DNA of 64,000 nt. Source: Haliotis rubra (taxonomy: Eukaryota). Made by a program: the position numbers and the translations under genes. This document shows, one piece after another, positions 6,817-41,092 of the stretch. Position 1 is the first letter of the stretch. Each line of letters starts with the position of its first letter. The DNA is taken from the NCBI RefSeq assembly GCF_003918875.1, contig NW_025767128.1, positions 868,001 through 932,000 of the forward strand, in the 5' to 3' direction. The notes under the pieces are model-generated. The model made no database searches, was not told the DNA's origin, and was given only the letters and a program-made list of their open reading frames with translations.

Positions 6817-9800
6817 ATGGCTTCTCTCAAATTCCTAACTCCACTACTAATACTGTCAGTACTCACAGTACTGTCAGTATATGGCCAGTATCAGCCCACG
6901 TGGGAATCTCTGGATGCAAGACCACTTCCTGCATGGTATGACGATGCCAAATTTGGTATCTTCATCCACTGGGGAGTATTCTCGGTGCCAAGTCTTAGTT
7001 CAGAATGGTTCTGGTATCGCTGGGAAAAGCTAAAGGTACCAGAAGTTGTTGACTACATGAAGAAGAACTTCCGACCAGATTGGACGTATGCTGATTTTGC
7101 TCCAATGCTAACTGCAGAATTCTTTGATGCTGATGAGTGGGCTAGAATTTTGGAATCTTCAGGTGCCAAGTAGGTATAGTCTTCTTGTCTGAAAAGCAGC
7201 ACATGCATCTATCGATACAAAATATAGATATCTGTACATAAATTGGTTCATTGCCATGTATATATCTTAAAGTCATCCTTACTTGTCATCACTATTTGTA
7301 AACCTCATGGTAACGCTGGATAACTCTTCATACTCAAGCACTCAATTTCTCATTTTCTGATTTCTTTATGTCATCATCGTAAAATGTCTACAATTAGAGA
7401 ATAATAGATCTAGATGGCAATGTGGACGAAGTGCCTTGCCCAGGGACACAACACAGTATGAGACCCAGGCCACAAATGTTGGTGTCTCCACCGAGATTCG
7501 AACCCGGGCCTTTGGCGTTAGAGGCCAGCAAGCTAACCACTACACCACCGAAAGAAGCAAAAACTATGGCGATTTGTTTCCATTTGTGACATGTCATAAC
7601 ATATCCCCGTGCCTTTTTCTTTTATATTTTCATTTTTACGTAATCAGAAAACTATTATAAAAAGATTTCCTAAATAATATGTATGGTCGCCTATTTCCCG
7701 ATATCAGTGGCTTTCCGCTTGGTAACATGCCACAACAACGAATATACCTCCGTTTTCGAAGCTTCGTATGAATAACATGCGAGGCGAATCGTTTGATGGT
7801 GGGTATCGTTCGAAAGCTCTGAACATCAACAATATCACTGTACCCTTGCCGAGAGTATTTTCACAGTTGTAAGAAGTGATTTTATTGGTTTCTAATGACC
7901 CTTTTTCGCCACAGTCTGCTATAAGGATCGTGATTTGTCAAAATCAGACGCGTAACTTAAGGCAGCCAATCATATAACGGCAATGGATACCGTCCTCGTA
8001 AACGAAAACTTTTAGATTTGGACGAAAGTTTTGGGTAAAATAATGCTATTCTGAACATATTAAGCAAGAAATCGCTACCTATACGTAAATTATGGAACTT
8101 ATTGGACGTATCGTGCTAGGTTATGACCTGTGACAAAAATGCTTCATGCATATATTTTCGCATTAAACATCGTGTCCGAGCGTGAAGATGGAGGCGGCGA
8201 AAGCCAAGATGTCACTTGTCAGTGACTTGACTTACATTACATGATCGCACAAAAAGATGGAAATAGTAATTTTATATGTATGTTTGACAACTTTTATGAA
8301 TGCTATTGTTGATTTTATTCATTAGTTTATTCAATTTATTTAATGATTTCCTCGAAACATCGTTACTTTGCTCTTTGACAATGTTATTGTGGACCCGCTG
8401 CCGAAGCATGTGTCCGAGAATCGTTGTTTTCAATAGCATTGCGAAACATAGTTTATAATTTTAATTCTGCCGATAATATATGATCAACTGAAATTTAATA
8501 AGTGTTTTCAGACATTGTGAAATGTGATAGATTTAATATATGAATCATAAGTCAGGTAGCTCCTAAAATTATGTCTCATTTTGACGTGACTACTGCCTGG
8601 CCGATTAATCGGCCTCCGGTGTCTGGGGACTCAAAACGTTGTGGCCGATTATTCGGCCTGCGGTGTTGAATGGGTTAACTTCAGACAAAGCAATGGTGCC
8701 AGAGTTTAGTATAAAGAATTAATACGAAAATTAACAATGACTCCGATTTCACCATAGGTTACAGATGAACATCTCAATTGCATATAATGTACATCTTCAT
8801 AACGTCAAGAATATTACAGTGTTTATGCGCTGGGTGGAGCCGGCAAACCATTCATGATGTTGTTAAGCACTAATCGCTCACTCGGTATGATTTCCCAAGG
8901 TACACAGTTTTCGTGAGTAAACACTGCGAGGGTTTCTGTCACTGGCCGAGCAATGTGTCCTTCAGTTGGAATTCAATGGTTGCTGGGCCCAAAAGGAATA
9001 TAGTCGGTAATGAATGCTAAAATTACTTTCCTTTTTGATGGTTTGTCTGAATTATTTCAATCCCTGTGTGTATTTTTCCTTTGAACCTAATTTCAAAACC
9101 AACTGATTTAATTGCCAAAGGGAAGTATACAAGCTATGCACATACGACGATGTCAGCTATATAAGATATAGCTATAAAAATAGAAAGTCCAAAGTCCAAT
9201 GAATTGTCATTTTTTAACTCATAAATCAGTTGTGACACGAAACATTCTCCAGACCCTGACAAACACATTTTCCATTGTTTCAGCTGAATTGGCACAAGCA
9301 GTCCGCACCAAGACGGACTTAAGATTCGGTCTGTACCATGTGCTGTACGAGTGGTTCCACCCTCTCTATCTCCAGGACAAAGAGAACAATTTCACAACAA
9401 GGAGATTTGTTGATGTAATTTTCGGCCTATTGCTACACTCAATTTGTAAAAAGTGTATTGTAAACATTTTCATTTTAGAAAATGACAAATATCTGCCAGT
9501 GTAATTTGTCATAATATATAGCCAAATTTTGATACCAAATTGCATCACCCAGTGACTGAAAATTATAGCATTACAACAAAATGAAAATCAATATATATTC
9601 CTCGCATGGCAAGATTATTGCAATGTTTCCAAGTCAGTCTTACAATATAGATTTATGGTCAATCTTTTAAATAAATGGAAAGATGTTAGAATCAATTTGT
9701 TAAATGGCCGAAATATTTAGGTGTTCTGTATATTGCCTGAATGAATCACAATGTAAACATTGACTAAAGTTAAAATACTCTCTACTAAAAACCTGTTTAG

Positions 9801-12800
9801 TATATATTTTCAGCAATCTTATTTTCTAACATATTACATTTAGAAGTCAATATTTGAAGAGTGGTATATGTCATCGTCTTCTTCTAGGGAGAAGGTTTTC
9901 GTATTCGCGTGATCTTGTAATCCCAGTAGCATTATTATCCTCAGTATCACTTCAGTTCAAGATCATGCCTGAGCTGTATGAGATTGTGAACACCTTTGAG
10001 CCTGACCTTGTTTGGTCTGATGGAGATTGGGAGGCCCCAGACACTTACTGGGGATCCAGGGAGTTTCTGACATGGCTGTACAATGACAGGTTAGTGTCAA
10101 TAAGTTCTGTAAGGGTAAATTAGATTGGCCCCATTGTATAGAACCTTTACACAAATACTCAAACATAATGATCCTTATGTTCTTATTAAGAAAGCATTCA
10201 CGCACTTGCTAAACGATTGATGACTTTGTCACACGATCAACTCACCCTTCACAAGATTTATATACTTGTTACAGGATTCACGCACTTGTTACGAGATGCA
10301 ATAACGTGTTACCAAAATCCTTTACTTGTTACAAGATTTATTCTCTTGTCACTCACAAGCTCATGATCAGCATTGGCACATGTTCAACAAAGGTAGGAAA
10401 TATATGTGAGCACAATGTCCATGGACAGGAGTTACATGTCCTACAACACGTAAGTGTTCAAATCTCAAAAGGACGTCGTATTCATTCCAGCCCAATCAAG
10501 GATAAAGTGGTGACCAATGACCGGTGGGGTATAGGGTGCCTCTGTACCCACGGAGGTGTCTTTACTTGTGGAGACAGATACAATCCTGGTACGTGAATAA
10601 ACATAAATTCTGTTGGTAGGAAGATGTTACTGTATGAAGCAGAAATATTGCTTGCTGCTAAACGGCTCAAGCTGGACATGTCCTGGCTTTTCGACAAATG
10701 GGCATTGCTGCAGACGAGCTCTTACCTGCATCTTCACATGGCTAAACACAGCATTGCTGTTGGGTTGGTGTTCATCACACCACCAACTGCTGGTTTGCCA
10801 GCTCAAAACTCAGGCACGTTTTGAAAAATGTCGTGAAGCTATTTGCTATGGTTTAGCCTCTCATTCCCTCACCTTATTAGAAAGCAGCATTCCGAGTCAT
10901 ATCTGAATTAGAAAGAATAAGAAGGTGCAAATGTAGTTATACATGTACATTAAGTTACTGTCTTATAACCTTAGACCAACCTAACTGCAAGCCAAACTCT
11001 ATTAGCTCTCATTGTATACAGGTGATAATGCATTCTGATTTGGCTGATGTTGCAGGTGTTCTTCAGAAGCACAAGTGGGTGAATGCTATGACAATAGACA
11101 AGAGGTCATGGGGCTTCCGACGTAATGCTCCCCTATCAGACTACCTGACCATAGAGGAACTCATTGAAACTCTAGCTAAAACTGTCAGGTAAACCAGCTT
11201 CCACACCAATAATGGTTGCAGTATATGGATATTTCGTCCTTCTTATGAATTATGCGAGACAGAAATAGTTTTTGTCAACCATTGTCATGGGGCTGCTCAT
11301 AACTGATGATCTTGAGCGATCTTACAAACGATTGTCATTTTAAAATGTTCAGGAAACCACTATCTTGAAGAATCCTATATACCATTTCAGCATTGTCACA
11401 TAATTCCTGTTCTTGAAGCCGTTGTCTTCCATGAGAATTATGAGCAGTCAGCTTTATACATGTGGTAATATTTCAATACATGATGTATACATGCAGTTGT
11501 GGCAATATCTTGGAGACATAACATTAACCTTCCATGCTGTTCACGATCAAACAATCCTAAGTTGTCCTGATCATTGTCTCTTCTGTTCCAGTTGTAACGG
11601 TAATCTACTCATGAACATTGGACCAACTGCCTATGGTGTGGTCAGCCCCATATATGAGGAGAGGCTGAAGCAGATGGGCGAGTGGCTCAAGGTGAATGGT
11701 GAAGGCATCTATGAAACAAGACCCTGGACCTACCAGAATGAAACTGTGATTCCCGAAATATGGTAAGCATTTGCTGTATTCATTACACAACTTGGGGTAC
11801 AACCGAGCTTTCCACACTGATTTCAATATAAGGGTAACACTATTTTTCAGGGCATTATCATTTGTAGAAGCCCTAGGTCTTTCATTAACTGCCCGACGAA
11901 GGAGGGCAGTTGAAAAGACCGAGGTCTTCTGCAAATGATAATGCCCTGAAAAATAGCTTTACCGTTATTATAGCTAAAATGGATAGAATTTCTAATAAAA
12001 TAAGAATAAAACAACGGCATTGGTTTTGAAGCATTTACTGCTAACAGCAAACGACGGAGGTCACGAACACACTTTTTACAAATATGGAAACGTCATAGAA
12101 CAAAACAGACGACGTCACTATTGAGAGTGACGACATTCGACCTTGACCTTTGCCCATACTACCAGCCGCCATTTTTTTTTCAGTGCTCAATAACGTTAGA
12201 GTTCCCAGTCGATGTTATCATTGCTGTATGTTGTAATTTATGGTACAATTGTTATGGTTGGCACCGGCAAGAAAGTGCATATTTGGCACAGGTACATGTG
12301 ACGAATGTGAGTCAGAAATATGGTCAATAATGAACCCAAGTTCAAACGAGCCGTAGGTGATTGAACATCAACAGCTGAGCTACTTATGACGTCAACTAAC
12401 AACGGGCTTGATAATGGCCCGTCGTCAAGCATTTTGTGGGCATTATCAAGTTACAGTGGCCCGCTCATTTCTAATAACGTGCGGGCGTTTTAATGATAAT
12501 TCTATCCATTTTAGCTATAAAGAAAATTAAACGACAGCATTGTGGTCAGGTTATGATTCAGGTGATCAGAAATGATGTCCAATGTAGTACCTTATTTTTC
12601 ACTTGTAAAACATGTTTTGCTGTTTTGAATAACTGTATATGTTGTGACATATGCCATGGTTGCGAACACCAGGTATTCCTACTATTCATTCGTGATGCAT
12701 TTTCAGTGCTCATGATAGGGTCAGAATAGTACAATCAACAATGCACAGATGTCTTATGAGAATGGAAGGGGTCTTGTTGCTTTAGCTTCAATGTTGAACC

Positions 12801-13064
12801 ATGTTCAGGTACACCTCAAGGACAAATGGACAAGAAAAAGACATCTACGCAACCGTCATGAGCTGGCCCAACGTAGGGACCTTCCAGCTGATCCGACCTA
12901 TCCCTAATGCCAACTCTGTGGTCAGTCTACTGGGCTACTCTGGAACATTCAGCTACACAAAAGCTGCAGGTCAAGGCATCAACATCAACATTCCGGCCAT
13001 TCCTGCAAACGCTATGCCGTGCAAGTGGGCATGGGTGTTCAAGATCACCAATGTTCAAAACTAA
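6817..13064 (+). CDS. FUCA: Alpha-L-fucosidase (GH29), copy A1, 8 exons, ~460 aa, signal peptide
   Basis: Exons 6817-7169, 8900-9006, 9284-9414, 9956-10089, 10491-10588, 11056-11188, 11592-11762, 12809-13064. All GT-AG, total 1383 nt in frame. Motifs [40 protein letters not shown] at ~13225. Confidence 0.95.
7412..7551 (-). mobile_element. tRNA-derived CORE-type SINE fragment
   Basis: Minus strand has A box ggtgtagtggttagc, B box gggttcgaatctc, then gttgtgtccctgggcaaggcact (CORE-like). Confidence 0.7.
7560..8678. mobile_element. piggyBac-like non-autonomous element, right end only, in A1 intron 1
   Basis: Ends ...gaatGGG|TTAA, with subterminal repeated palindromes ggccgattaatcggcc / ggccgattattcggcc. 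The paralog A2 has an empty TTAA site (aatttaacttcag ~28697). Confidence 0.6.
11833..12520. mobile_element. Non-autonomous element with a long terminal hairpin plus inverted repeats (Crypton-like architecture)
   Basis: ~130-bp palindrome at 11833-11965. Inverted pair ttatagctaaaatggatagaatt (~11968) and aattctatccattttagctataa (~12498). Absent from A2 intron 7. Confidence 0.6.
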
Positions 13065-15898: not shown

Positions 15899-18800
15899 AT
15901 GGACACAAAGACGGTCGTCCTGATATTCCTAGCTTTAACGACAGCAGATGGACGTTCAGCAAACAAGAAGCAGACTGAGATTCGCTACGACCCCACATGG
16001 GAGTCCCTAGATTCAAGGCCATTACCAACATGGTATGATGAAGCCAAAATTGGAGTCTTTGTGTCATGGGGAGTCTTTTCTGTACCAAGTTTTGGAAACG
16101 AGTGGTTTTGGGAAGGATGGCAAGGGGACAAAAATCCAAAATATGTTCAGTATATGCAGGACAACTATAAACCTGACTTCACCTATGCTGCCTTTGCAAG
16201 TGACTTCACGGCAGAGTTTTATGATGCTGAAGCTTGGGCTGAACTGTTTGCGGCTTCTGGAGCTAAGTATGTTGACATTTATTCACTGAGAACGTGTATG
16301 TTGTAATTGCAGCAGTAATTAATCTCTTAGTAGCGAGTGAGTGAGTATAGTTTTACGCCGCTTTTAGCAATATTCCAGCAATATCACGAAATGGCCTTTA
16401 CATATTGTACCCATGTAGGGAATAGAACCCAGGTATTCGGCGTGACGAGCGAACGCTTTGACCACTATGCTACCCCACCGCCAATAATCTCATAATAGCT
16501 TCATGGCAGCCCGAGTTAGTGGGTGACATGAGAGTGATGAGAGTGTACGTTATTTGGTGAGTGAATCGGCGAGTGAGTGTCTGCGTAACACACATCGACA
16601 TGGATATGTTTCTACAAAACCTTTGGATCAAAGGGCTAGGATGATTAAATCCTCACACAGAAAAAGATAAATGAACCTGCTTAAAAACGTTTATTCAGTA
16701 ATATGCAGAATATGTGTGATCAAAACACACCCAGTACATGCACATCGTGAGGCGATTCTAAGAAACGTTTGGCATTGAGTACAATGTGAATGTATCATTT
16801 CAGGTTGTCAAACAATCCCTAATGAAACATTCCTGGCAGTAATGATTAAAGGGGCAATGTGTTTCATATTTTAGCCATGACCTCTACTCAATACTCAATC
16901 ATGAATCACCCCATGTTCAGTCGTGTTTTTTCAGATACATTGTGTTTATAACTAAACATCATGGAGGGTTTTGTAACTGGGCGACTAATGTCAGTTTTAA
17001 CTGGAACTCAATGATGGTTGGTCCCAAGAGAGACCTTGTTGGTAATTATACGTTAAAACTTATTTCAACCTGAACAATATTTCATTGTTCAAAATTATTA
17101 ATTTTAGATTTTGTAATAGTTTAACTCGTTTAGGTTTTTATATCATCCTCTTCAGTTTTGTCGAAACAAAGTTTCGCAAATTTGAAATATTATTTTAATG
17201 TTATGAAGATAGTAATCGATTATTTTAAGAATTCAAAGAGAAGTAAATCAATTTGGCAAGGAAGCAGTGTAATTTGGTCATTTATTCTTCTGATATCAAC
17301 ATGAACAAAAACAAATTTATGCAAATATTTTTTTTATTTCAACGAAATATTATATTTTCAAATTTGATAATAGATGATCTGAAAACAAGTGTAAAATATG
17401 GGTCCTTGTGTTAATAAAAGGTGAGATGTCTCAAGCACTGAGATCAAAGACAGATCTGCGCCTTGGCCTGTATCACTCCCTGTTTGAGTGGTTCAACCCT
17501 CTGTATCTACAGGACAAGGCCAACAACTACACCACCACCAGGTTTGCTAAGGTCAGCTTTACTAAATTTATCACTGATGGATTATCGAGAATTGGACGTG
17601 AGTACCTAGGTTCGGGAGCTGGTTTTGAGTGCGAATGAAAGTGTAAGTTTGGTAGGTTAGTTCACTTCGACAGAGATGGTCTGTGTTTGTGTCCCGCCAT
17701 CCCATAGCCAGTGACGTAAACCCACACCCTTTCCTTCAGGAAAGGTAAAAGTTGCCTCTCCGAAGGACTGAAGTCAATACTAGACATCCTCAGCTGATAC
17801 TTACTGGGTTATATGGAGCTTTATACATCTAAGCAACTGATGTGGTCACCTGACCTGCTTCATTAATTAAGTTGTTAATGTTGTCTTGTTGAACCAACAG
17901 AACAGTAATCGTATTGATCGTGCAATGACATCATGTACCATAATAATCAAATAAATTTCAGGAAAAGACTATTCCTGAGCTGTATGAGCTTGTGAACACC
18001 TACAAGCCTGACATTGTCTGGTCTGATGGAGACTGGGAGGCAACAGATAACTACTGGGGGTCCAGGGAGTTTCTGGCCTGGCTCTACAATGACAGGTATA
18101 CGGTTGCGTTGTACCCTTTTACTTTGTGTCTTTGTTAGTCTGTCTCACAGTCCCTGAACCATATCATTTTCCCTACAGCCTAGCCCTCCCTGCAATGTTA
18201 AAGCCTTACATGAAACAAGTCTAGATTTCCTCAGGTTCTGAATCTCTGGCTTCTATGTCTTTGTGTAAATACACTAAAAACGGAAATCGGTGCACTCATG
18301 GCATATTTAGAAGGTAGAAAGGTTTCTCGTCATGACATTGACAGTATTTAACAAATGTATGTTCATTCAGTATGTTTATGGTAACTGCAACAGACCAGCA
18401 TTTGATACGTAAAATGCCCAAATAAACCACCACCTATAACAAGTACTTGTTGTACATGTACATACATTTATCTAGCTGCACAGTGTCAATGGATTTAACA
18501 ACAGAGACCTCTTTTGGTATCTTCCAAGAAATTAGGCAAGTGAATTTAAGAAGACCTGCTTGATCATAGAACGTCTGTCTGTTCTGTTGAAATTTTGCAA
18601 ATATGTCATTCATAGCTTATATAATATTTGGATTCTTGTATAGGCAGTGGTATTCACATATTCCAGCAAATGGCAAATGGGCTGGACTCAAGACAAGACT
18701 CCTCAACACAGCAACAAGCCCTAGCCATCTTGTACAAATCCATCTCTTAAATATATTCTCTTTGCAGCCCTGTGAAGGAGATAGTCGTCACCAATGACAG

Positions 18801-27861: not shown

Positions 27862-30800
27862 ATGACTTCTCTCAAAATCCTAACTCCACTTCTAACACTG
27901 TCAGTACTTACAGTACTCTCAGTATATGGCCAGTATCAGCCCACGTGGGAATCTCTGGATGCAAGACCACTTCCTGCATGGTATGACGATGCCAAATTTG
28001 GTATCTTCATCCACTGGGGAGTATTCTCAGTGCCAAGTCTTGGTTCAGAATGGTTCTGGTACCTCTGGGAAAAGCGAAAGGTACCAGAAGTTGTTGACTA
28101 CATGAAGAAGAACTTCCGACCAGATTGGACGTATGCTGATTTTGCTCCAATGCTAACTGCAGAATTCTTCGATGCTGACGAGTGGGCTAGAATTTTGGAA
28201 TCTTCAGGTGCCAAGTAGGTATATTTTTCTTATTTGGAAAGCAGCACATACATCTATAAATCTGAAATAAAATGTATCTGCATAAATTGATCCACTGTGA
28301 CGTCATCCTTTCTTGTCATCATTGTTTGTACAGTTCATCGTACCTCTGAGTAACTCTTGATGCTAAAGCACTCAATATCTGGTTTTATATGTCATCATCG
28401 TAAAATGACTTCATTCAGAGATTAATAGATCTCTTTTTGGGGGAATATTCATCTTCCTGTCAATCGGAAAAGTCAAAACAGCGTTCCAACATGTAGATTG
28501 GTGATCGTTTCTGACAGACCAGGTTGTATGTGTGTATTGGTTCTTACCCAACAAAGATTGTACATCAGTTATAACAATTTTTGTGACTTGTTCCCGTAAT
28601 AATGTTTTGACCACTGTCACTGTAGGGAACGGTATCTGGACCATTGTTCATAGCAGATTTCAATAAATGCAAACTAGATTATATACCGTGAAGTAATTTA
28701 ACTTCAGCTAAAGCAATAGCACAGTTTGGAATGAAGAATTCACACGAAAATTAACAATGACTACGATTTCACCATAGTTTAAAGATGAACAATGCATTTA
28801 ATGTATATATTCATTAACTCCTAACATCAACAATATTACAGTGTGTGTGTGCTGAATGTTGATAGCAAATCATTTCTGATGCTGTAGTGAAAAGCAATAA
28901 TCACTCACTTTGTATGCTGTGACCTTCCTAGGTACACAGTGTTCGTGAGTAAACACTGCGAGGGTTTCTGTCACTGGCCGAGCAATGTGTCCTTCAGCTG
29001 GAACTCAATGGTTGCTGGGCCCAAAAGGAATATTGTTGGTAATGAACACTATTTAATGAATACGTCCACCTTCCATGGTTTGTCATCAGAATTATCTCAA
29101 TCCTTGTGTACGTTTTCCGATTGAACCAAATCTTAAAACCAACTGATTTAATTGCCAAAGGGAATTATACAAACTATACACATACGACGACAGCTGTATA
29201 AAAGTATGAAAATAGAAAGTCAAAAGTCCAATGAATGATTTTTAATACATAAATCAAGTGTCACACGAAAGAATCCAAACCCTGAGAAACATATTTCCTG
29301 TTGTTTCAGCTGAGTTGGCGCAAGCAGTCCGCACCAAGACGGACTTAAGGTTCGGTCTGTACCATGTGCTGTACGAGTGGTTCCACCCTCTCTATCTCCA
29401 GGACAAAGAGAACAATTTCACCACAAGGAGATTTGTTGACGTAATGTTTGGCCTATTGTTACAGTGAATGTCTAAAAAGACTGAAAATTTCACTAACCGT
29501 TTTGTAAACATTTTCATTTTACAAATTGACAAATGTTAGCCAAGGTAATTTGTCATAATAAAAAACAATTTTCATACCAAATTGTATCACCCAGTGACTA
29601 AAATGATAGAATTACAACAAAATGAAAATCAATGAAAATTCCTTGCATGATAAGTGTTTTGTAATATTTCTGAGTCACTCTTACTAGATTTAGGATCAAT
29701 CTTTTAGAAAATGGAAAGATGTTACAATCAATTTGTCAGATGACCGAAATATTTCGCTGTTCTGTATATTCTGTGAATGAGTCACAATTTAAACATTGAC
29801 TGAATCTTATGTACACTCTACTAAAATCTATTTAGTATTTATGTTCAGTATTTTTAAAATATATATTTAAAAGTCAATGTTTGAAGTGTGGTACGAGTTC
29901 GTCATCGTCTTCTTCTAAAGAGAAAGTTTTCGTATTCGAATTGTCATCCTACTACTTCCACTTGTAATCCCAGTAGTATTAGTATTCACATTATCACTGC
30001 AGTTCAAGATCATGCCTGAGCTGTATGAGATTGTGAACACCTTTGAGCCTGATCTTGTGTGGTCTGATGGAGATTGGGAGGCTCCAGACACCTACTGGGG
30101 ATCCAGGGAGTTTCTGGCCTGGCTCTACAATGACAGGTTAGTGTCAATACGTTCTGTATGGTGTAAATTAGATTGGCCCATTGTATATAACCTCTGGACA
30201 AACACTCTAACATAATGATCATTATGTTCTTATTTTCGGAAGAATTCACTCACTTGCTAAACGAGTCATGGATTCGTCACACGATCCACTCATCATTCAT
30301 AAGAATCATATACCTGTTACAAGATTCATGCACTTCTTAGGAGATTCAGTCACTTGTTACTAAACTGACATATATATAAGTCACAGACTTTCCTAATATG
30401 TTGCCAAAACACCACAGATATCGTGCCCAATTGCGAATTTGCCAGTCAAAGTCACAACACTTTTCAAATAATCCCAAAACACCAGGTGTGTACTTTCTTT
30501 TGTACGTCAGTATATATTCCTTTGTGTATTCCTATATTTATTAAAAGATTCATTCACTAGTCATTCCCAAGCTCATGGTCAGCATTGACAAATCCTCAGC
30601 AAAGGTTAGAAAGATATATAAGCACAACGTCAATTGACAAGAGTTGCATGTCCTACAATACCTAAGTGTTCAAATCTCAAAATGAAGTCGTATACATTCC
30701 AGCCCAATCAAGGAGAAAGTGGTGACCAATGACCGGTGGGGTATAGGGTGTAGCTGTACCCATGGGGGTGTCCACACTTGTGGAGACAGATACAATCCTG

Positions 30801-32699
30801 GTACGGAACAAATATATATTCCATTTGTAATAAATGTTATCGTATAAAGAAAGGTTTGTATGCAGTTGCTCAAAGCAAAGTAGGACATATACTGGCTATA
30901 CGATCGTGGTCTGTGCATAACCAAGTCTAGACCAAACGATCCACTGACTGACAGCTTGAGCTTTGACTTGTGCAGTTGGCATATGATGACTTGCACCAAC
31001 CAAGTAGGCATTGCTGAAGACCATTTCTAACCTGCATCTTCTAAGGGCTAAACAATTAGAATTGTTGTTGTGTTGGTGCTCATTAATTCACAAAATGCAG
31101 GATTCCCAGCTAAAATCGTAACATTTTGAAGAATGTCGTTATACAATTGTCACAACTGCAAGCCAAAGTCTACACACTCGCTCCTCATTTTGTACAGATG
31201 ATATATGTATTCTGCTTTGACTCTTCAGGTGTTCTGCAGAAGCACAAGTGGGTGAATGCCATGACAATAGACAAGAGGTCATGGGGCTTCCGACGTAATG
31301 CTCCCCTGTCAGACTACCTGACCATAGAGGAGCTCATCGAGACTCTAGCTAGAACCGTCAGGTACACCAATTTCCACACAAATAATGGCTGCCTTACATG
31401 TATATTGCATCCTTCTTATCTACTGTCTGAGACAGAAATAGCTTTTGTCAACCACTGTCATCAGGTTGATGACGATTCTACAAACGACTCTCACTTGAAA
31501 ATGTTCTGGAAACCACTATCTTGAAGAATCCTACAAACCATTGTTACACAATTCTTGTTCGCTCTCTTCCATGAGAGATAGGAGCAGTCAGCTTTATATA
31601 TGTGGTAATATTTCAATACATGATGTATACAAGCAGTTGTGTCAACATCTAGGAGACATGACATTAACCTTCCATACTGTTCACCATCAAATAACTCTAA
31701 GTGGTCCAAAGTGATGATCATCGTCTCCTCTGTTCCAGTTGTAACGGTAATCTACTCATGAACATTGGACCAACTGCCTATGGTGTAATCAGCCCCATCT
31801 TTGAGGAGAGGCTGAAGCAGATGGGCGAGTGGCTCAAGGTGAATGGTGAAGGTATATATGAAACAAGACCCTGGACCTACCAGAATGAAACTGTGATACC
31901 CGAAATATGGTAAGGATTTGTTGTGTCTACCTTTCACAACTTGGGGTGCAAATGAGCCTGCACTTCCCAAAAAGATTTCAAAAGAATGAAACGACTCCTG
32001 CTCAAAAGGATTGTGATTAGGGTTACACAAAAGCTTTCAAAATGTTTTAAGCTTAACATGTGGAGCAGATTTCCAAATTTAATGCATCAGGGACCAAGCG
32101 ATGTCCTATTCAGTTCCCCATTTGGACTTGCACTCTAGTTCTAGCCTTTGTTCAGGTGTACCATTGAATTTCAGTAGAGTGATATACAGGCATTATCCCG
32201 TATATATGTTTAGTTTATACACTTCCAGCCTACAGATATCTACATTTGTAACGTTTGAGCTACTATCAGACATGTTCTTTCTACGAACATTTCAATGAAT
32301 GTCATAAAACTCTTGCTCAAAATGTATATCATTCAAGCCCTAAGCCAAGCTTTCAAAATGTTCAATGATAGGTGTGTGGAGGACATTTCTGAAATTGCAA
32401 TTTAATTTAATTTAATTTAATATCAATGTTGAACCATGTTCAGGTACACCTCAAGGACAAATGGACAAGAAAAAGACATCTATGCAACCGTCATGAGCTG
32501 GCCCAACGTAGGGACCTTCCAGCTGACCCGACCTATCCCTAATGCCAACTCTGTGGTCAGTCTACTGGGCTACTCTGGGACATTCAGCTATACAAAAGCT
32601 GCAGGTCAAGGCATCAACATCAACATTCCGGCCATTCCTGCAAACGCTATGCCGTGCAAGTGGGCATGGGTGTTCAAGATCACCAATGTTCAAAACTAA
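27862..32699 (+). CDS. FUCA: Alpha-L-fucosidase (GH29), copy A2, 8 exons, ~460 aa
   Basis: Exons 27862-28214, 28932-29038, 29310-29440, 30003-30136, 30703-30800, 31229-31361, 31739-31909, 32444-32699. Same exon sizes as A1, in frame. Confidence 0.95.
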
Positions 32700-33744: not shown

Positions 33745-34140
33745 AGTTATCAATGAATGAGATGTCTGCAGCACTGAAATCTAGGACACATCTGCACCTT
33801 GTCACGACTCCCTGTTTGAATAGTTCCACCTTCTGTATCTACAGGACAAGGTCAGTCCACATCAAGGCCACATCACATATAGACCACAGAGAAAACAATC
33901 CAGATCTTGACCGACATTGCACCAGTATATCTATACATGATAACTGTTGGGTCAGAGCTATGTCTCAACAGCAATACTAAATGTATGAACCCAAATGGGC
34001 GTCCTTAGATTCCAGCCCGATTATGGCATAACATGATGAAATTTATCTGGGAATCTTTATCCACTGGGGAGTGTTCTCTGCACCAAGCTAGTTCTGAGAG
34101 ATTGTGTTGAGAACTGGGATAGAAGCTAATTATATAGATT
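33745..34140 (+). pseudogene. Fucosidase ghost module upstream of B2
   Basis: EMSAALKSRTHLHL...YLQDK, then [34 protein letters not shown]. Paralog of 14305-14790. Confidence 0.78.
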
Positions 34141-35059
34141 TAAGGAAAAACAACTACTACAGACAGGATTGGATAGGTGTCGATTTTGCAAAAGATTTTA
34201 CAGCAAACCTTTCTCAGACAGCAAACTGAGAAATAATATTTTGAAGAAGTATCAGCTTCAATCTTCATCTGGTGTGGAAGGTTAATTGTTGAACTACTTG
34301 AACCCATGCGCCAGTTAACGCAGCCTTGAACGTACCTTGCAGATAGTAGGATCCCTCTCGCAGACATAACGCCAACGGCAAAAAACCAATGACTGTCACT
34401 GTCCCATAATCTTTTCAACTAAAATGTTCGGACGAAGTGGGAGACCATCAACAGCCTCAGAAAATCCTGATATTGCAAAGGGAAGCAACTCTTAAATCCG
34501 GTTTTGCAACTAATGAAACTATTAACATTTCTTGATACATACTACATACAGAAATGCCACCCTACCTCTTCCAATATTTACTCTTTCCTCCTTAATTTTA
34601 CATAACATTGGCCGGAGCAGTTCTTCCTGGCCCAACCTGATGGAATGACTGAATAGAATGACAGAAGATTAAGAAAGCTGAATGAATTTCTACTCTGCAG
34701 ACTTCATGCTTTACTGAGAAGATCATAATTCCTTAAGAATCGTAATTTGATATCACTAATTATCCATGATACCAATTATGGTGACATAGGGCCACATGTC
34801 AAATTTCACCTTTCTTAGTCCAGCAGTTTGACCGCAAATTAACGTGGAGAAAACCTCTCAGCTCTTGTCACATCAAGGTGAAAAAAACGCACATAGAAAC
34901 ATTAATAGTACATCCATTATCATCCAGCCTATCTTTAACCTTGAACATATGTCACGCGATGTAATCAGCTGTACTTGACTTCGTGGCCATAAAGAGATCG
35001 TGTTAAAATGCCATCACACTTTGCAGCAGGATCACAAACACATCTATCCCTCATCAACA

Positions 35060-38000
35060 ATGGACACAAAGACGGTCGTCCTGATATTCTTAGCTTTCAC
35101 GACAGCGGATGGACGTTCAGCAAACAAGAAGCAGACTGAGATTCGCTACGACCAGACTGAGATTCGCTACGACCCCACATGGGAGTCCCTAGATTCTAGG
35201 CCATTACCAACATGGTATGATGAAGCCAAAATTGGAGTCTTTGTGTCATGGGGAGTCTTTTCTGTACCAAGTTTTGGAAACGAGTGGTTTTGGGAACGAT
35301 GGCAAGGGGACAAAAATCCAATGTATGTGCAGTATATGCAGGACAACTATAAACCTGACTTCACCTATGCTGACTTCGCAAGAGACTTCACGGCAGAGTT
35401 CTACGATGCTGAAGCTTGGGCTGAACTGTTTGCTGCTTCTGGGGCTAAGTATGATTTTATTAATTCACTGAGAGATTGGATGTTGCAGTAAATCCCAGCT
35501 ATCCAGTGGATGCCTTCTGAGTGACCGAATAGCGCTTTGTTTTGACAACATATTAATTTTTTTTAAAACTGTGAAATAATTTTGTACATACCATTAAGGA
35601 ATTCTAAACTATTTCACCCACTGTAATTCACACGTAACATCCACAAATGGAGAACATGTTTCACCTAGGAACACATATGTCTTTAGTATTAACTGATAAT
35701 TCCCTGGACCCTGCCTGCTATCTCCTAAAAAAGACCAATGTCCAGGGCAATGCCATCGCCTCTTCCTTCACTCACTGTTGTGTCTTTCTGCGCCTATTGT
35801 TGTTTCTTCTTTCGTCCATTGTTGTCTCATGTCTGTGTATCTTGTGTCTTCGTATCTCCAGTGTTGTCCATTGCAATATACATGTTCATTGCATGTTATT
35901 GTCTTTACAACAACGAGTACGATACACCTGCTTACTGGACTACTGGGATAACTGATTCAACAAACAAAACGGGTGTATTTTACATGACGAATGATTATAT
36001 TAACTAAATTATATGTGATCATATATACATATGACCAAGAAGTATTTTTAAACCCTTTGCACACTGTCTCCTACATTATGAGTTGAAAATATAATTTGGG
36101 ATTCCCCAGTTCTCTTAATGAAAACACTAGTGTAGGCTGATGTCATAGTTCCATACGTTTGCCATGAATCCTATACGTCATCTCGGTTCATACTTTTTTT
36201 TCAGATACACTATCTTTATAACTAAACATTGTGGAGGGTTTTGCAACTGGCCAACTAACGTCAGTTTTAACTGGAACTCAATGATGGTTGGCCCCAAGAG
36301 AGATATTGTTGGTAATTATACATTAAGACTGATTCTAATCTCAAAACAATACTTGAGATTGTTCACAATAGATTTATTCTAGTTTCTAAATATGTCTTCA
36401 ACACGTTTTCCAATTCATAAAATACGATCTCCGATACTTTGCAAGAATAATATTACTCAGTTTGTCTTCTTTCCTTTCGTGCTTAGTTTGGAAAGCAGAA
36501 TGCAAAAACCTCGGTCAATTATGAACGGAAGCTGTGGACTTCAAGCTGCATGTTTTTGAAATTTCATTTTCTCTCATTTTCCATTCAAAATCAAGGTAAA
36601 GGTACTTGATGATGTGAATATATATTTTAAGTCGGTAATTGGTAACAAAAGTATTGAAATTAAATGAAATGCTATCAACAGGTGAGATGGCGCAAGCACT
36701 GAAGTCAAAAACAGATATTCACCTTGGCCTGTACCACTCTATGTACGAGTGGTTCCACCCTCTGTATCTACAGGACAAGGCCAACAACTTCACAACCACC
36801 AAGTTTGCTGAGGTCAGCGTTACTATATGTATCATTGAGGGTTTGTTGGTTGTGACAGTGCTTCTTGATGCTGGTTAGCTATATGGTGTTAGTATTGGCG
36901 AGTGATTGGCTTTATACCACTTGTGGTCTTTTCCAGCAATATCAGATCTACGCACATAAACGAGTGGTTGACGTATCAGACCTGAACCAAGGACTTTAGT
37001 ATGCAAAGCAAACACTTTAACAACTTGGCTACCTGCTGCCCACATGGTGATTTTGAGTGCTTCGGGAAATTGTAGGTGGACGGTGTGTGTTGATAATGGA
37101 TTGATTTATCAATCATTTTGGATGATGATGGTGTTTCTTGAGTTGGTTGCTGAAAGATGAGTTAACAGGATGAGTTTGTAGCTAAGCTCATTTAGTTTGT
37201 GAGTTTGGATACAAAATGTGAATTTCTTTTAAGTTTTAATCCACTATAATATTGCTAATTGTATAAAGCCATACTGGCTATTTGGGGAAAGTGTAGAAGG
37301 CTTGCCTCCCTAAAACACTGTAGTACATACGTGATATGTTCTGGACCAAACTGTTATGGATTAGTCGCAATGACAGTCATGGTGCATGTATCAGTTTCAC
37401 TATTTCCAAAGCGTATCAGGAGCTGCTCATTAAATCTATTCGTGTTACAATGTGTATTAATTTAAGACATCATGACGCATCAGAATGAAACCTCTTTCAG
37501 CAAAAGACTATTCCTGAGCTATACGAGCTTGTGAACACCTACAAACCCGACCTATTGTGGTCTGATGGTGACTGGATGGCCCCAGATACTTACTGGGGTT
37601 CCAAGGAGTTTTTAGCCTGGCTGTACAACGACAGGTATGTTTTCCTGAATTGGTAATACATCAACATTATGTGGCATTTTGTAAATACAGAAATAATGTC
37701 ATTTAAGGCAAAAACATGTCCCAAAAACAGAAGGTGTGTTCTTTATTCTGTTGTTAAAATAAAACGTCGAGCATTTTGAACTGCCATGGGTGACTGGATT
37801 TCAAGACAGTACTACCCCTCATGGCAATATGTGCTTGTTATTGTGTCCAATGGCAAAAACCTCAGTTTCCTTAATGTGTTCTTTGCAGCCCAGTGAAGGA
37901 CAATGTTATCGTCAACGACAGATGGGGGAAAGGGGACTCATGTCACCATGGGGGCTACTTGACGTGTACAGACAGGTACAATCCAGGTACTGAAGTAAAG

Positions 38001-41000
38001 TGTTATTAGACGGTGTGTGAGTTTGATTTTACACTCGTTTAGCAATGAATGAGAAAATACACTGGCGGGGACACAAGCACGGGGCTTCACCTGTTAAAAC
38101 CATGCATTGAATCTAACATAGTCCTTCAGTGTGATGAGGGATTAACCACTGGGCTACCCCTTCCTCTACACTTTTCCTCTTATATAGAGACATTTCACAT
38201 ACAAAGTGGAATTTTCCAAGGTTGACCTTAAATGGAACGTAATTGATGTACATTGAAAAGTCAAATTTTGAAATATAAAGAAGTTGATAGTCAAATCCCC
38301 AAAGTATCACTGTATATATATATTGTGATTTTCGTTGATAAATACACTAAAACATCTAAAGTTGAAACATTTTATCGAACGGCGTTAATGATTGTAAAAT
38401 GATGTCGGTTCACTGATGACCGACTCTGTGGTGTAGTGGTTAGAGCGTCTACCCGGAGAGCGTAAGTTCGCGGGTTCGATCCCCTGCCACGTCATACCAA
38501 ATACGTTAAAATATGGTACTTGTTGGTCCCAGCCTGGCGCTCGGCATTAATGGGTACAACAAGGACTGGTCGGCTGGGAGTCAGTATAATGAGTTGGGTA
38601 TTCATGCTAAACAGCGGCATGGTATGTCAGTGAGCTAGCACTATAAAACCAGCTTAAGTCTGGCCTAGTACAAGCAGCCACACATACAGACGCATGCACG
38701 TCGTCATATGAGCGAAATATTCTTAAGTACAACGTTAAACCCTATTTCACCTCACCCCACCTCCGGTTCCCTGATTATCAAAAGTATTGTGATTATGACT
38801 ACATGAACACTAAGAGTACAGCTGATTCTGAATGTTATAGGAGTACTTCAGCCAAGGAAGTGGGAGGGAGGATTAACAATTGACAAGAAATCGTGGGGAT
38901 TTCGTCGAGAGGCTGTCCTAGAAGATTATCTGACCATGGATGAGATTATAGCACGGCTGGTTCAAATAGTCAGGTGTGTACTTACATAAATATATACTGA
39001 GAGGCAACGAAAACGCAATTCCATTTTCAAAGGTTAACTTATTAACAAAGGAAAATTACAAAGCATATGATATGTATGTTAGCAAAGTCCAATCACAGTA
39101 GAGAATTTCTGACCAAACCAGTGTCCACTATCACCAGTTTCAACACATTTACACCTGACTGCCTGAGCAGACTGTCAGTACCTGGCAAATGTCTTGACAT
39201 GGAATGACACAAACGACAGATCAAATTATTCGGAACAGCGTTCCAGTGATTTTACAGTGCCTGCGTGAACTCAGCAACATTGCGGGGTGGAATCTGCTGA
39301 TGTTTCACACGCCTACCAAGTTCGTCCCACAGGTGCTGTATTGGATTCACGTCTGGTGACCTGGAGGGCCACTGCGTGACTTCCACAATGTTGTTGTTCC
39401 TAAGAAAATTCCGTGTCAGGATGGCTGTGTGTGGACGAGCATTGTCATGCTGAAAGACAAGTTGGTTACCTCTATGTTGTCTCAAGATAGGAAGAAGAAC
39501 TGGCTGGAGAACAGTCTCGACGTTACGCCGCGCCGTCAAGTTGCCTTCACAATAACAAGCTATGAAAGAAAATGAGCATTTATGTTGCCCCAAACCATTA
39601 CTCCTCCACCAAAACGACCTCTCTCAATAACACAGGGTCGCACAAAACGGTCACCTTGACGTCGATAAACACTTTGGCGTCCATCTGGGAAAGAGACCTT
39701 AAAGCGAGACTCATCGGGAAAAAACAACATTCCTCCAACCGACATTGACCAGGAAACTACCTGCTGCAGCGCATCGCTGTCGTTAAGTCGATGAAGATGA
39801 GTTAAGATCTGGCCTTGGTGTTGTTGGCAGTCTGTGTAGCTCTCTGGAATCGATCTCGGGGGTGTTGCACGACGATGTAGCAGTCCTGATGTGCCGTGGT
39901 CACATGTTGAATGCCAGGGCGTGACCGGTCCTCCGCCCTGCCAGTGACTTGGTAGCGCCTTATGAGCCGACTAACAGTTGATGGATGCACGTTAACATGT
40001 GGTGCGACATCGGTCTGGGAAATGCCAGCTCGCAGCATTCCAATGGTTGATGTCTCTGATCTAGCGTTAACCGTGTCATGGTTCATATTGGTGTCAATGT
40101 CAAATCAAACTGTGTTTTATAGGGGACAATCATGGACTGATTAAATGCAGTATCAAAATGCATGTCATGGCAGACTGACACTTAAAGCTGTGTTCTGGAG
40201 TTTGCTCATGACGTTGTGCACAGAGCCTTACCTGTCTTTACACACAATGACATTAGACCGTTATCATGCTAAGTTATGATTTTCATTAACTAATAACTTT
40301 ATTATTTCTTATGGGACTATTACACGATAGAAAATGCTGATTGCGTTTTCGTTGCTTCTCTGTATATATCAGTCATTGAGTGAGTTTGGGATAGGATTCT
40401 GATGTGGATGCAGCCCGGCACACTGATTACACGCAGGTAAGAGAACCAGCACCCTGTGCCCCGCATAAATATAAGCATCATAACAATTATAAACAATCTC
40501 AAATACCTCGGTAGTGGGTGAGGCTTATTTTTTCAAGGTTGATTTGTATCATTTCAGCTGTGGAGGGAACCTGGCAATCAATGTCAGTCCAACCAAATAT
40601 GGCATGATTAGTCCAATCTTTGAGGAGAGACTGCGACAGTTGGGAGACTGGCTGAAGGTGAATGGGGAGGCTATCTACTCCTCCACACCTTGGACGGTCC
40701 AGAATGACACAGTCACACCAGGAGTTTGGTAGGTACTTCATATATTCCACACCACTTCGTCAGGCCCCGAATGACACAACTACACTCGGATTTTGGTGTA
40801 GTGAATACATACAGTCATATTGTTTCTTGTAATTTTCACGGTGTCTTCTCTCTGCAGGTACACACAGAGAGCTGGGACGGTGTACGCCATTGTGCTCAAC
40901 TGGCCACAACCAGGTCAACTCATCCTTGGATCAGCTTTGCCAAAAACTGGAATGAAAGTCAGCCTCCTTGGCTACACTGAAGGCTCTTTCTCCTGGCAGA

Positions 41001-41092
41001 ATGCTTCACCAAAAGGAATCAGTATCACAATCCCTCCAATCCCTGTCAACCAGATGCCATGTCAGTGGGCATGGGTCTTCGCCCTGACATAA
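35060..41092 (+). CDS. FUCA: Alpha-L-fucosidase (GH29), copy B2, 8 exons, ~465 aa
   Basis: Exons 35060-35448, 36205-36311, 36682-36812, 37501-37634, 37889-37986, 38841-38973, 40558-40728, 40858-41092. Total 1398 nt in frame, with a 21-bp duplication encoding QTEIRYD twice. Confidence 0.95.
38419..38763 (+). mobile_element. tRNA-derived SINE (Meta-like), B2 intron 5
   Basis: Same family as 27242-27605. Near-perfect TSD cggttc(a/c)ctgat. Confidence 0.88.
38995..40364 (-). mobile_element. Tc1/mariner transposon, degraded, B2 intron 6
   Basis: TIRs tactgagaggcaacgaaaacgcaat / attgcgttttcgttgcttctctgta with TA target. HTH ([23 protein letters not shown]), [34 protein letters not shown]. Confidence 0.92.

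What the first reader, a model, noticed from the sequence alone, without database searches (positions are those of the whole stretch)
6817..41092. Four intact GH29 fucosidases, each with a different altered active-site motif set
Seen: the normally conserved KHH(E/D)G motif reads SKHCEG in A1/A2, TKHHGG in B1 and TKHCGG in B2. The canonical KWExC motif reads KWVNA (A1/A2), KWEDA (B1) and KWEGG (B2). GLYHS becomes GLYHV in the A copies, and B2 has WSDGDWM and NVSP. The nucleophile Asp (WSDG) and the Asp of CxDRYNP are retained in all four. Established: the HH pair binds the fucose ring in GH29, and both the CxD Asp and the KWE Glu have been proposed as acid/base in human FUCA1. Inference: this is a secreted enzyme panel diversified for modified substrates such as sulfated fucose in algal fucoidan, or for transfucosylation or lectin-like roles.
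Basis: partly seen in the sequence, partly recalled or inferred. Interest (0 to 1): 0.8.

Follow-up and report, generated by a model that had tools for sequence, protein, structure and literature searches.

The report
Abalone fucosidase paralogs with remodelled sugar pocket
Four intact, selectively maintained copies of a fucose-cleaving enzyme gene in the blacklip abalone keep their catalytic residues but have replaced the histidines that normally grip the 2- and 4-hydroxyls of fucose, which makes them candidates for digesting modified (for example sulfated) algal fucose, though no activity has been measured.

Summary
The window is Haliotis rubra contig QXJH01000443.1. It holds four intact eight-exon GH29 genes (A1, B1, A2, B2), and my models are identical to RefSeq proteins.

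- A1 and A2 share one motif set, so there are three sets, not four.
- KWENA is as common as KWENC in molluscs.
- KWVNA also occurs in nine non-Haliotis gastropod proteins, eight of which keep both histidines.

On human FucA1 numbering:
- A copies: His134 (O2 ligand) to Cys, Ser179 to Val, Glu289 to Val.
- B1: His58 to Ser, Glu135 to Gly.
- B2: both His58 and His134 lost.
- The nucleophile Asp225, acid/base Asp276, His133, Tyr177, Arg259, Glu70/Trp71 and the C6 pocket are kept.

These states are fixed in A and B clades across up to four Haliotis species. dN/dS is 0.10 (A1/A2) and 0.25 (B1/B2). Similar replacements arose several times in other marine molluscs and are rare elsewhere.

The most likely reading is active retaining glycosidases with an altered -1 subsite. 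Sulfated fucose is only one candidate substrate. Expression is unproven. The scan has no earlier finding of this on other DNA.

The parts
6817..13064 (+). Gene A1, GH29 alpha-L-fucosidase-like, 460 aa. Exons 6817-7169, 8900-9006, 9284-9414, 9956-10089, 10491-10588, 11056-11188, 11592-11762, 12809-13064.
   Evidence: Splice model. Identical to P0388 = XP_046582108.1. Pfam PF01120 E=1.7e-126 and PF16757. Human FucA1 7pls E=1.8e-158.
15899..23309 (+). Gene B1, 458 aa. Exons 15899-16266, 16935-17041, 17421-17551, 17962-18095, 18768-18865, 19475-19607, 20347-20517, 23075-23309.
   Evidence: Identical to P0159, named alpha-L-fucosidase-like [Haliotis rubra]. Same gene call on contig QXJH01000443.1. 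Pfam.
27862..32699 (+). Gene A2, 460 aa. Exons 27862-28214, 28932-29038, 29310-29440, 30003-30136, 30703-30800, 31229-31361, 31739-31909, 32444-32699.
   Evidence: Identical to P0387 = XP_046582107.1. 97% amino-acid identity to A1.
35060..41092 (+). Gene B2, 465 aa. Exons 35060-35448, 36205-36311, 36682-36812, 37501-37634, 37889-37986, 38841-38973, 40558-40728, 40858-41092.
   Evidence: Identical to P0380 = XP_046582106.1. 7pls E=1.2e-171. AlphaFold model pLDDT 88.9, TM 0.90/0.96 and rmsd 1.6 A to 7pls_A.
8925..8927 (+). A1 Cys127 (TGC) at the position of human His134, the O2 ligand. The A2 equivalent is at 28957-28959.
   Evidence: Ligand role from Table 10 of PMC11796335.
9340..9342 (+). A1 Val173 (GLYHV) at the position of human Ser179. 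The A2 equivalent is at 29366-29368.
   Evidence: Tends to change together with position 134 across molluscs: 5 of 7 independent pairs, p=0.06.
11079..11081 (+). A1 Val283 (KWVNA) at the position of human Glu289, a structural residue and not the acid/base. The A2 equivalent is at 31252-31254.
   Evidence: PMC9548408.
16064..16066 (+). B1 Ser56 (FVSWG) at the position of human His58, the O4 ligand. The B2 equivalent, Ser63, is at 35246-35248.
16963..16965 (+). B1 Gly133 (KHHGG) at the position of human Glu135. The B2 equivalent, Gly140, is at 36233-36235.
36230..36232 (+). B2 Cys139 (TGT) at the position of human His134. B1 has CAT (His) here, two base changes away.
   Evidence: The same Cys is in H. 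asinina P0378, 92% identical to B2.
10019..10021 (+). Nucleophile Asp (human Asp225): A1 Asp219. Others: B1 18025-18027, A2 30066-30068, B2 37564-37566.
   Evidence: Invariant in all 249 proteins surveyed.
10573..10575 (+). Acid/base Asp (human Asp276): A1 Asp270. Others: B1 18850-18852, A2 30785-30787, B2 37971-37973.
   Evidence: PMC9548408.
60632..63379 (+). Fifth, A-type copy, a pseudogene. It has in-frame stops (WSDGD*E at 60797-60808) and frameshifts in the exon 7 and exon 8 equivalents. Exons 1-3 were not found.
33753..34211 (+). Relic GH29 exon-3-like and exon-1-like pieces with stops, upstream of B2. Similar relics lie at 14619-14864 (upstream of B1) and 26253-26411 (upstream of A2).

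Best explanation
Shown: the four genes belong to a Haliotis-specific, tandemly arrayed expansion of animal GH29 (class A) alpha-L-fucosidase genes that evolves by birth and death. The array also contains a pseudogene, relic exons and more copies 100-130 kb upstream. All four encode complete two-domain enzymes that keep the full retaining-glycosidase machinery. That machinery is the Asp nucleophile (human Asp225), the Asp acid/base (Asp276), Tyr177, Arg259, His133, Glu70/Trp71 and the hydrophobic pocket for the C6 methyl (Phe56, Trp223, Trp299). What has changed is the part of the -1 subsite that holds the sugar hydroxyls. The A copies replace the O2 ligand His134 with Cys, the neighbouring Ser179 with Val, and the structural Glu289 with Val. 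B1 replaces the O4 ligand His58 with Ser and Glu135 with Gly. B2 carries both the B changes and His134 to Cys. Inferred: these are still active exo-glycosidases acting on a 6-deoxy-L-hexose. Their pocket has been reshaped to accept fucose modified at O2 (A type), at O4 (B1 type) or at both (B2 type). Candidate modifications are sulfate, acetyl or methyl groups as found in algal fucans, or a closely related sugar. On this reading an algal grazer gains a panel of digestive or lysosomal enzymes with different specificities.
For: Intactness and identity to RefSeq models. Family and fold: Pfam, human FucA1 E=1e-158 to 1e-171, B2 model TM 0.90/0.96 to 7pls. Residue mapping: the alignment offset was checked against Asp225, His58 and Gly60, and ligand roles come from Table 10 of PMC11796335. 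Asp276 as acid/base and Glu289 as structural: PMC9548408. Purifying selection: dN/dS is 0.096 for A1/A2 and 0.25 for B1/B2, and no exon exceeds 0.42. Conservation across species: all 11 A-type rows of the tree, from four Haliotis species, have Cys134/Val179/Val289. All 16 B-type rows have Ser58/Gly135. B2's extra Cys is shared with H. asinina P0378. Catalytic residues are invariant in all 249 proteins surveyed. The replacements are rare outside Haliotis (non-His at 58 in 9 of 204, at 134 in 10 of 204). They recur in other marine molluscs: Aplysia, Mytilus, Patella, Littorina, Batillaria and a chiton. None was seen in the land and freshwater snail rows labelled in the tree set. There are at least 5 independent changes at position 58 and at least 9 at position 134. 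His to Cys and His to Ser each need two or more base changes. Precedents: divergence at the His58-equivalent led to GH29 alpha-L-glucosidases (PMC9774334); seven fucosidase paralogs are present in scallop hepatopancreas, with proposed specificity differences (PMC5159873); a sea-urchin enzyme releases 2-sulfo-fucose and no gene is named for it in the review read (ref. 89 of PMC11943901).
Against: No activity, substrate or tissue data exist for any of these proteins. Expression was not shown here. All run holders laid on B2 were DNA contigs. The one RNA-like run (X12, a congener) gave only very low depth confined to the bins holding exons 1-5, which could come from a paralog. The 2-OH contact usually matters for transition-state stabilisation, so His134 to Cys could simply lower activity. 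The A-type changes make the pocket more hydrophobic, which does not favour a sulfate. Glu289 to Gln abolishes activity in the human enzyme, although Val at this position coexists with both histidines in eight other gastropod proteins. The covariation tests did not reach significance (p=0.06 and 0.25). The protein survey is biased towards relatives of the Haliotis queries.
Confidence: 0.55

Rival explanations
1. They are ordinary alpha-L-fucosidases. The pocket substitutions are tolerated or compensated changes with little effect on which sugar is cleaved. The copies differ mainly in where, when or at what pH they work, or in the aglycone (+1) side.
For: All catalytic residues and most sugar ligands are kept. 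Cys and Ser can still hydrogen-bond. B1 and B2 differ most in the exon that encodes the acid/base loop, with 9 of 32 residues changed, and that loop faces the aglycone. GH29-A enzymes are generally relaxed in linkage specificity (my own knowledge of the family).
Against: The two His ligands are described as invariant in characterised alpha-L-fucosidases (PMC9774334). They are kept in about 95% of 204 non-Haliotis animal proteins. The replacements are fixed across species and recur in parallel with partner changes (Ser179, Glu135), which looks like a coordinated remodelling rather than drift.
Confidence: 0.27
2. They are non-catalytic, lectin-like fucose binders (pseudoenzymes), for example in gamete recognition or immunity, as proposed for sperm fucosidases of some invertebrates.
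For: Loss of one or two sugar ligands could cripple catalysis. Fucosidases are discussed in gamete interaction in molluscs and ascidians (PMC6718869).
Against: The nucleophile Asp, acid/base Asp, Tyr177 and Arg259 are invariant in all 45 Haliotis proteins, which a pure binder would not need. dN/dS is low, unlike the fast-evolving gamete-recognition proteins of abalone (my own knowledge). Losing hydroxyl ligands would weaken binding, not strengthen it.
Confidence: 0.1
3. One or more of the four (B2 above all) are young, unexpressed copies on the way to becoming pseudogenes, like the fifth copy in the window.
For: The array shows gene death: a pseudogene at 60632-63379 and relic exons. B1/B2 has the higher dN/dS, 0.25. 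No RNA holder was found.
Against: All reading frames and splice sites are intact. dN/dS is well below 1 in every exon. B2's unusual Cys is shared with an H. asinina protein that is 92% identical. Synonymous divergence of 0.15-0.29 between the pairs means long survival without a single disabling change.
Confidence: 0.05

Closest known systems
Human lysosomal alpha-L-fucosidase FucA1 (GH29 class A; PDB 7PLS/7PM4)
   Same: 56% identity over the full length, with the same two-domain architecture and fold. Same nucleophile Asp225 and acid/base Asp276. Same His133, Glu70/Trp71, Tyr177, Arg259 and C6 pocket.
   Different: His134 (O2) is Cys in A1, A2 and B2. His58 (O4) is Ser in B1 and B2. Glu135 is Gly in B1 and B2. 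Ser179 and Glu289 are Val in A1 and A2. The genes are tandemly amplified and lineage-specific, not single-copy housekeeping genes.
Mollusc digestive-gland alpha-L-fucosidases: the scallop hepatopancreas paralogs (PMC5159873) and the Pecten maximus enzyme active on fucoidan (Berteau 2002, cited there)
   Same: Expanded GH29 families in algal or plankton feeders. Paralogs have been proposed to differ in substrate binding. The canonical scallop proteins are about 61% identical to A1.
   Different: The scallop proteins sampled here keep both histidines. The abalone A and B clades form a separate Haliotis-only radiation. The specific loss of the O2 and O4 ligands was not found described in the papers searched.
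GH29 alpha-L-glucosidases ClAgl29A/B of Cecembia lonarensis (PDB 7XSF/7XSG)
   Same: These are GH29 members whose new sugar specificity was discovered through divergence at the His58/His34 position. They show that this position tunes which sugar is accepted.
   Different: They are bacterial and only about 25% identical. They carry Asp, not Ser, at that position, together with other changes (Asp139, Phe195). The abalone proteins keep the Glu70 equivalent, and the residue at the Phe195-equivalent position was not examined.
Partially purified 2-sulfo-alpha-L-fucose-releasing enzyme of the sea urchin Strongylocentrotus nudus (Sasaki et al. 1996, ref. 89 in PMC11943901)
   Same: An animal digestive activity that removes an O2-modified fucose. 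This is the kind of activity a pocket lacking the O2-binding His could have.
   Different: No sequence is given for that enzyme in the review read, so relatedness cannot be tested. The link is a hypothesis only.

Membership tests
Glycoside hydrolase family 29, class A (animal branch) | Alpha_L_fucos catalytic domain followed by the Fucosidase_C domain | tested here: met
   PF01120 E=1e-122 to 1e-127 and PF16757 E=1e-23 to 1e-26 in all four. The exons are colinear with the profile.
Glycoside hydrolase family 29, class A (animal branch) | (beta/alpha)8-like barrel plus C-terminal beta-sandwich fold | tested here: met
   B2 model pLDDT 88.9. Best match 7pls_A with TM 0.90/0.96 and rmsd 1.6 A. Only B2 was modelled.
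Glycoside hydrolase family 29, class A (animal branch) | Catalytic nucleophile Asp in WSDG (human Asp225) | tested here: met
   Asp219, 224, 219 and 231 in A1, B1, A2 and B2.
Glycoside hydrolase family 29, class A (animal branch) | Animal-type acid/base Asp on the acid/base loop (human Asp276) | tested here: met
   Asp270, 275, 270 and 282. Role from PMC9548408.
Alpha-L-fucosidase in the strict sense (EC 3.2.1.51) | The three fucose-binding histidines (human His58, His133, His134), reported invariant in characterised fucosidases | tested here: not met
   His58 is Ser in B1 and B2. His134 is Cys in A1, A2 and B2. His133 is kept in all. So they are filed as GH29 members, not as proven fucosidases.
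Alpha-L-fucosidase in the strict sense (EC 3.2.1.51) | Hydrophobic pocket for the C6 methyl group (human Phe56, Trp223, Trp299) | tested here: met
   Kept in all four. This argues that the substrate is still a 6-deoxy sugar.
Alpha-L-fucosidase in the strict sense (EC 3.2.1.51) | Hydrolysis of alpha-L-fucosides | not testable with these tools
   Needs an enzyme assay.
GH29 alpha-L-glucosidase (ClAgl29 type) | Asp at the His58/His34 position and Asp replacing the Glu70/Glu66 equivalent | tested here: not met
   Ser, not Asp, in B1 and B2. Glu70 equivalent kept. Features taken from PMC9774334.

The most novel reading that the evidence does not exclude
The A and B clades are animal-encoded 'modified-fucose' exo-glycosidases. 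A-type enzymes would remove O2-substituted fucose, B1-type O4-substituted fucose, and B2-type doubly substituted fucose (sulfated, acetylated or methylated), directly from algal fucans without prior trimming. The same solution would have evolved repeatedly in marine molluscs through paired changes: His134 with Ser179, and His58 with Glu135. That would give a gene identity to the fucoidan-degrading fucosidase activities reported from mollusc and sea-urchin digestive glands.
Probability: 0.2. Interest if true: 0.8.

Novelty: new variant of a known kind. Interest (0 to 1): 0.5.

Why it matters
Fucoidans are abundant, hard-to-degrade algal polysaccharides. In the bacterial literature read here, GH29 and GH95 are treated as exo-fucosidases that work alongside sulfatases, and invertebrate 'fucoidanase' and fucosidase activities are listed in the review without family assignment. 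A conserved, selected set of animal GH29 enzymes has lost exactly the ligands for the two hydroxyls that, to my knowledge, fucoidans most often modify. This gives concrete candidates that can be cloned. It also gives a simple structure-function test for how the GH29 -1 subsite can be retuned. If the paralogs turn out to be ordinary fucosidases, the case still shows that the 'invariant' histidines of GH29 are dispensable in animals.

Tried and rejected
(1) The whole-library search with exon 1 returned mostly exon-1-only fragments. Only about a dozen hits were full length, so the survey rests on three word searches and one cluster look-up.

(2) The run searches and read laying gave no clear RNA. 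X1, X4 and X8 cover introns and so are DNA. X12 gave only trace depth in the exon 1-5 bins. The expression question stays open.

(3) Per-exon dN/dS was computed to look for positive selection. No exon was above 0.42.

(4) Assembly or sequencing error as the source of the odd codons was rejected. The same residues occur in other Haliotis species, and each replacement needs two or more base changes.

(5) 'A copies lack the acid/base because KWE is KWV' was rejected. Asp276 is the acid/base, and KWV occurs in eight other gastropod proteins that keep both histidines.

(6) The idea that a single A-B unit was duplicated once was rejected. A1/A2 introns align (K2P about 0.17-0.2) but B1/B2 introns do not. 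B1/B2 dS ranges from 0.12 to 1.0 between exons, which points to a mosaic history with gene conversion.

(7) An Rfam scan of the high-copy element in B2 intron 5 found nothing.

(8) The covariation tests are suggestive only.

Full report
**What is there.** Pieces of the Pfam Alpha_L_fucos profile lie colinearly in short open frames, and tblastn shows four full sets of eight exons plus a partial fifth.

I built splice models from in-frame GT-AG pairs. All four genes share the same seven intron positions and phases (2,1,0,2,1,2,2) and have no internal stops:
- A1: 6817-13064, 460 aa
- B1: 15899-23309, 458 aa
- A2: 27862-32699, 460 aa
- B2: 35060-41092, 465 aa

A look-up of the B1 protein places the window on Haliotis rubra assembly GCA_003918875.1, contig QXJH01000443.1, at about 868001-932000. 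My four translations are identical to the RefSeq proteins P0388 (XP_046582108.1), P0159, P0387 (XP_046582107.1) and P0380 (XP_046582106.1). So 'four intact genes' is confirmed by an independent annotation.

Each protein has the catalytic and the C-terminal Pfam domains. Each aligns end to end with human FucA1 (7pls) at E=1e-158 to 1e-171. An AlphaFold model of B2 (pLDDT 88.9) superposes on 7pls_A with TM 0.90/0.96 and rmsd 1.6 A.

**Which residues changed.** The alignment to 7pls was anchored by checking that chain index plus 25 reproduces the published Asp225, His58 and Gly60. Ligand roles come from Table 10 of PMC11796335:
- His58 binds O4.
- His133 binds O4/O3.
- His134 binds O2.
- Glu70 and Trp71 bind O3/O2.
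- Tyr177 stacks on the sugar and bonds the nucleophile.
- Phe56, Trp223 and Trp299 form the C6 pocket.
- Arg259 supports the catalytic residues.
- Asp225 is the nucleophile and Asp276 the acid/base.

In the abalone genes:
- A1 and A2 have Cys127 for His134, Val173 for Ser179 and Val283 for Glu289.
- B1 has Ser56 for His58 and Gly133 for Glu135.
- B2 has Ser63, Gly140 and also Cys139 for His134, plus Met for Glu229, KWEGG and NVSP.
- Everything else in the list above is kept in all four.

A1 and A2 have the same set. The His58 loss in B1/B2 was overlooked. Glu289 is not a catalytic residue: in the human cryo-EM structure it lies 10.5 A from the nucleophile and props up the acid/base loop, while Asp276 is the acid/base (PMC9548408).

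**How unusual this is.** I gathered 249 animal GH29 proteins of 370-560 aa from one whole-library search, three word searches and one cluster look-up, and tabulated the aligned positions.
- Asp225, Arg259, Asp276 and His133 are invariant.
- After moving two unlabelled H. cracherodii rows into the Haliotis group, 204 non-Haliotis proteins remain. Among them position 58 is not His in 9 and position 134 is not His in 10.
- The last residue of KWExC is Ala in 90 and Cys in 108.
- Glu289 is Val in 9, all gastropods. Eight of these, from land, freshwater and sacoglossan snails, have both histidines; the ninth is Patella P0275.

So KWExA and KWV are not signs of an odd active site. The His replacements are rare.

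Outside Haliotis the His replacements occur in:
- Aplysia P0268 (KHCEG with GLYHV)
- a Mytilus clade (FITWG with KHCEG)
- Patella P0275 (KHGEG, GLYHC)
- Littorina P0326 (KHAEG, GMYHC)
- Batillaria P0182 (FITWG, KHHSG)
- a chiton, P0366 (FICWG, KHHGG)
- Mytilus californianus P0305 (FVNWG)
- P0363 (Nymphon) and P0368 (Halocaridina), both with FIVWG
- a few unnamed transcript-derived proteins

None was seen in the land and freshwater snail rows labelled in the tree set.

**Evolutionary setting.** A tree of 130 proteins gives a Haliotis-only clade of 37 rows (support 94). It was built with FastTree, then with IQ-TREE quick after masking the trait residues.
- The A type forms an 11-row clade from four species on a long stem (0.32). 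Every row has Cys134, Val179 and Val289.
- The B type is a 16-row clade (support 100) nested inside a grade of Haliotis proteins with the canonical motif set. Every row has Ser58 and Gly135.
- B2 sits with H. asinina P0378 (92% identical), the only other B protein with Cys134. That change therefore predates the split of the two species and is independent of the A-type change.

On the masked tree the minimum number of changes is 5 at position 58, 9 at 134, 7 at 179, 3 at 135 and 6 at 289. Position 179 changes together with 134 in 5 of 7 independent pairs and never in the opposite direction (p=0.06). Position 135 changes together with 58 in 3 of 5 (p=0.25). Both results are suggestive, not significant.

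**Selection.** Nei-Gojobori estimates give dN/dS 0.096 for A1/A2 (dS 0.155), 0.25 for B1/B2 (dS 0.29) and about 0.1 between A and B. No exon exceeds 0.42. His to Cys (CAT to TGT/TGC) and His to Ser (CAC to TCA) each need at least two base changes.

**The array.** The four genes are part of a larger array that gains and loses copies.
- An A-type pseudogene lies at 60632-63379.
- Relic exon pieces with stops lie upstream of B1, A2 and B2.
- At least three more B-type genes lie 100-130 kb upstream on the same contig.
- At least 16 GH29 proteins of H. rubra appeared in the searches.
- A1/A2 introns still align (K2P about 0.17-0.2) but B1/B2 introns do not.
- B1/B2 dS ranges from 0.12 (exons 1 and 8) to 0.84-1.0 (exons 4 and 5).
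- Exon 4 of B1 is 84-86% identical to the A copies, against 58-69% for other exons.

The last three points indicate gene conversion and a mosaic history.

**Expression.** This could not be settled. Both run searches listed no holder on record as RNA. When reads were laid on B2, runs X1, X4 and X8 covered introns and so are DNA. The RNA-like run X12, from a congener, gave trace depth (0.9-3.2) only in the bins that hold exons 1-5. It gave none in the intron-only bins apart from a high-copy repeat, and none on exons 7-8. That is a weak hint of a B-type transcript and may come from a paralog.

**Interpretation.** Three facts argue for working enzymes rather than binders or decaying copies: every catalytic residue and the C6 pocket are strictly retained, selection is purifying, and the states are fixed across species. 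The changed residues are precisely the ligands of O2 and O4. From my own knowledge, those are the hydroxyls that algal fucans most often sulfate or acetylate.

There are precedents. Divergence at the His58 equivalent led to the discovery of GH29 alpha-L-glucosidases (PMC9774334). Scallop hepatopancreas contains seven GH29 paralogs thought to differ in substrate binding (PMC5159873). A sea-urchin enzyme releasing 2-sulfo-fucose has been partly purified, and no gene is named for it in the review read (ref. 89 in PMC11943901).

I therefore favour active retaining exo-glycosidases with a retuned -1 subsite (confidence 0.55). The nature of the modification is open. Cys plus Val makes the O2 corner more hydrophobic, which fits methyl, acetyl or deoxy at least as well as sulfate. 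Ser plus Gly at the O4 corner makes room and could bond a sulfate.

The rivals are plain fucosidases with tolerated changes (0.27), non-catalytic binders (0.10) and silent decaying copies (0.05).

**Comparison with what is known, and novelty.** The genes are already annotated as 'alpha-L-fucosidase-like', and expansion of GH29 in molluscs is published. I did not find the conserved loss of the O2- and O4-binding histidines in animal GH29 clades, or its recurrence across marine molluscs, in the papers searched. I rate it a new variant of a known kind, of moderate interest.

**Limits.** The protein survey is biased towards relatives of the queries. The trees are quick searches and are unrooted. 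'Secreted' rests only on reading the N-terminal leaders by eye. Distances inside the pocket could not be measured from the model.

Noticed in passing
window 60632-63379 (+): A-type GH29 pseudogene. It has stop codons in the nucleophile exon (WSDGD*E, 60797-60808) and elsewhere, and frameshifts in the exon 7 and exon 8 equivalents. No exons 1-3 were found. It lies near the end of the contig.
   Followed up: partly
window 14619-14864, 26253-26411, 33753-34211 (+): Degenerate GH29 exon-1-like pieces (and, at 33753-33856, exon-3-like pieces) with in-frame stops. Each lies about 1-1.5 kb upstream of the first exon of B1, A2 and B2. They look like remnants of dead copies in the array.
   Followed up: partly
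window 20471-20657 (+): A 64-bp tandem repeat (2.9 copies, 95% matches) that copies the last codons of B1 exon 7 together with its GT donor site. The period is not a multiple of three, so use of the second or third donor would shift the frame.
   Followed up: partly
window about 20660-22400 (B1 intron 7): B1 intron 7 is 2.56 kb, against 129 bp in B2. It holds a G+C-rich insert with open frames, for example 21047-21436.
   Followed up: no
window 38300-38900 (B2 intron 5): An element present at depth 1e5-1e6 in every run that was laid, with many internal joints and loose ends reading GGTTCGATCCCCG. It is probably a very high-copy, tRNA-derived SINE-like repeat of Haliotis. It has no Rfam match.
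   Followed up: partly
window 17962-18095 (B1 exon 4) and all exons of B1/B2: Mosaic history. B1 exon 4 is 84-86% identical in nucleotides to the A copies, against 58-69% for other exons. B1/B2 synonymous divergence runs from 0.12-0.13 (exons 1 and 8) to 0.84-1.0 (exons 4 and 5), and their introns do not align. This points to gene conversion among array members.
   Followed up: partly
window 35060-35448 (B2 exon 1): B2 carries a 7-residue tandem duplication (QTEIRYD twice) just after the hydrophobic leader, which B1 lacks.
   Followed up: no
L002 and L003 (same contig, record positions about 740166-772000): At least three further B-type GH29 genes (P0158 with a split-off C-terminal piece, P0160, and another of 458 aa) lie 100-130 kb upstream of the window. 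The array therefore spans roughly 190 kb.
   Followed up: partly
proteins P0268, P0275, P0326, P0291, P0343, P0328, P0182, P0366: Across molluscs, replacing the O2-binding His with Cys, Ala or Gly tends to come with Ser179 to Val, Cys or Ala. Replacing the O4-binding His with Ser, Thr or Cys tends to come with Glu135 to Gly or Ser. These look like recurrent paired changes, though the tests were not significant.
   Followed up: partly
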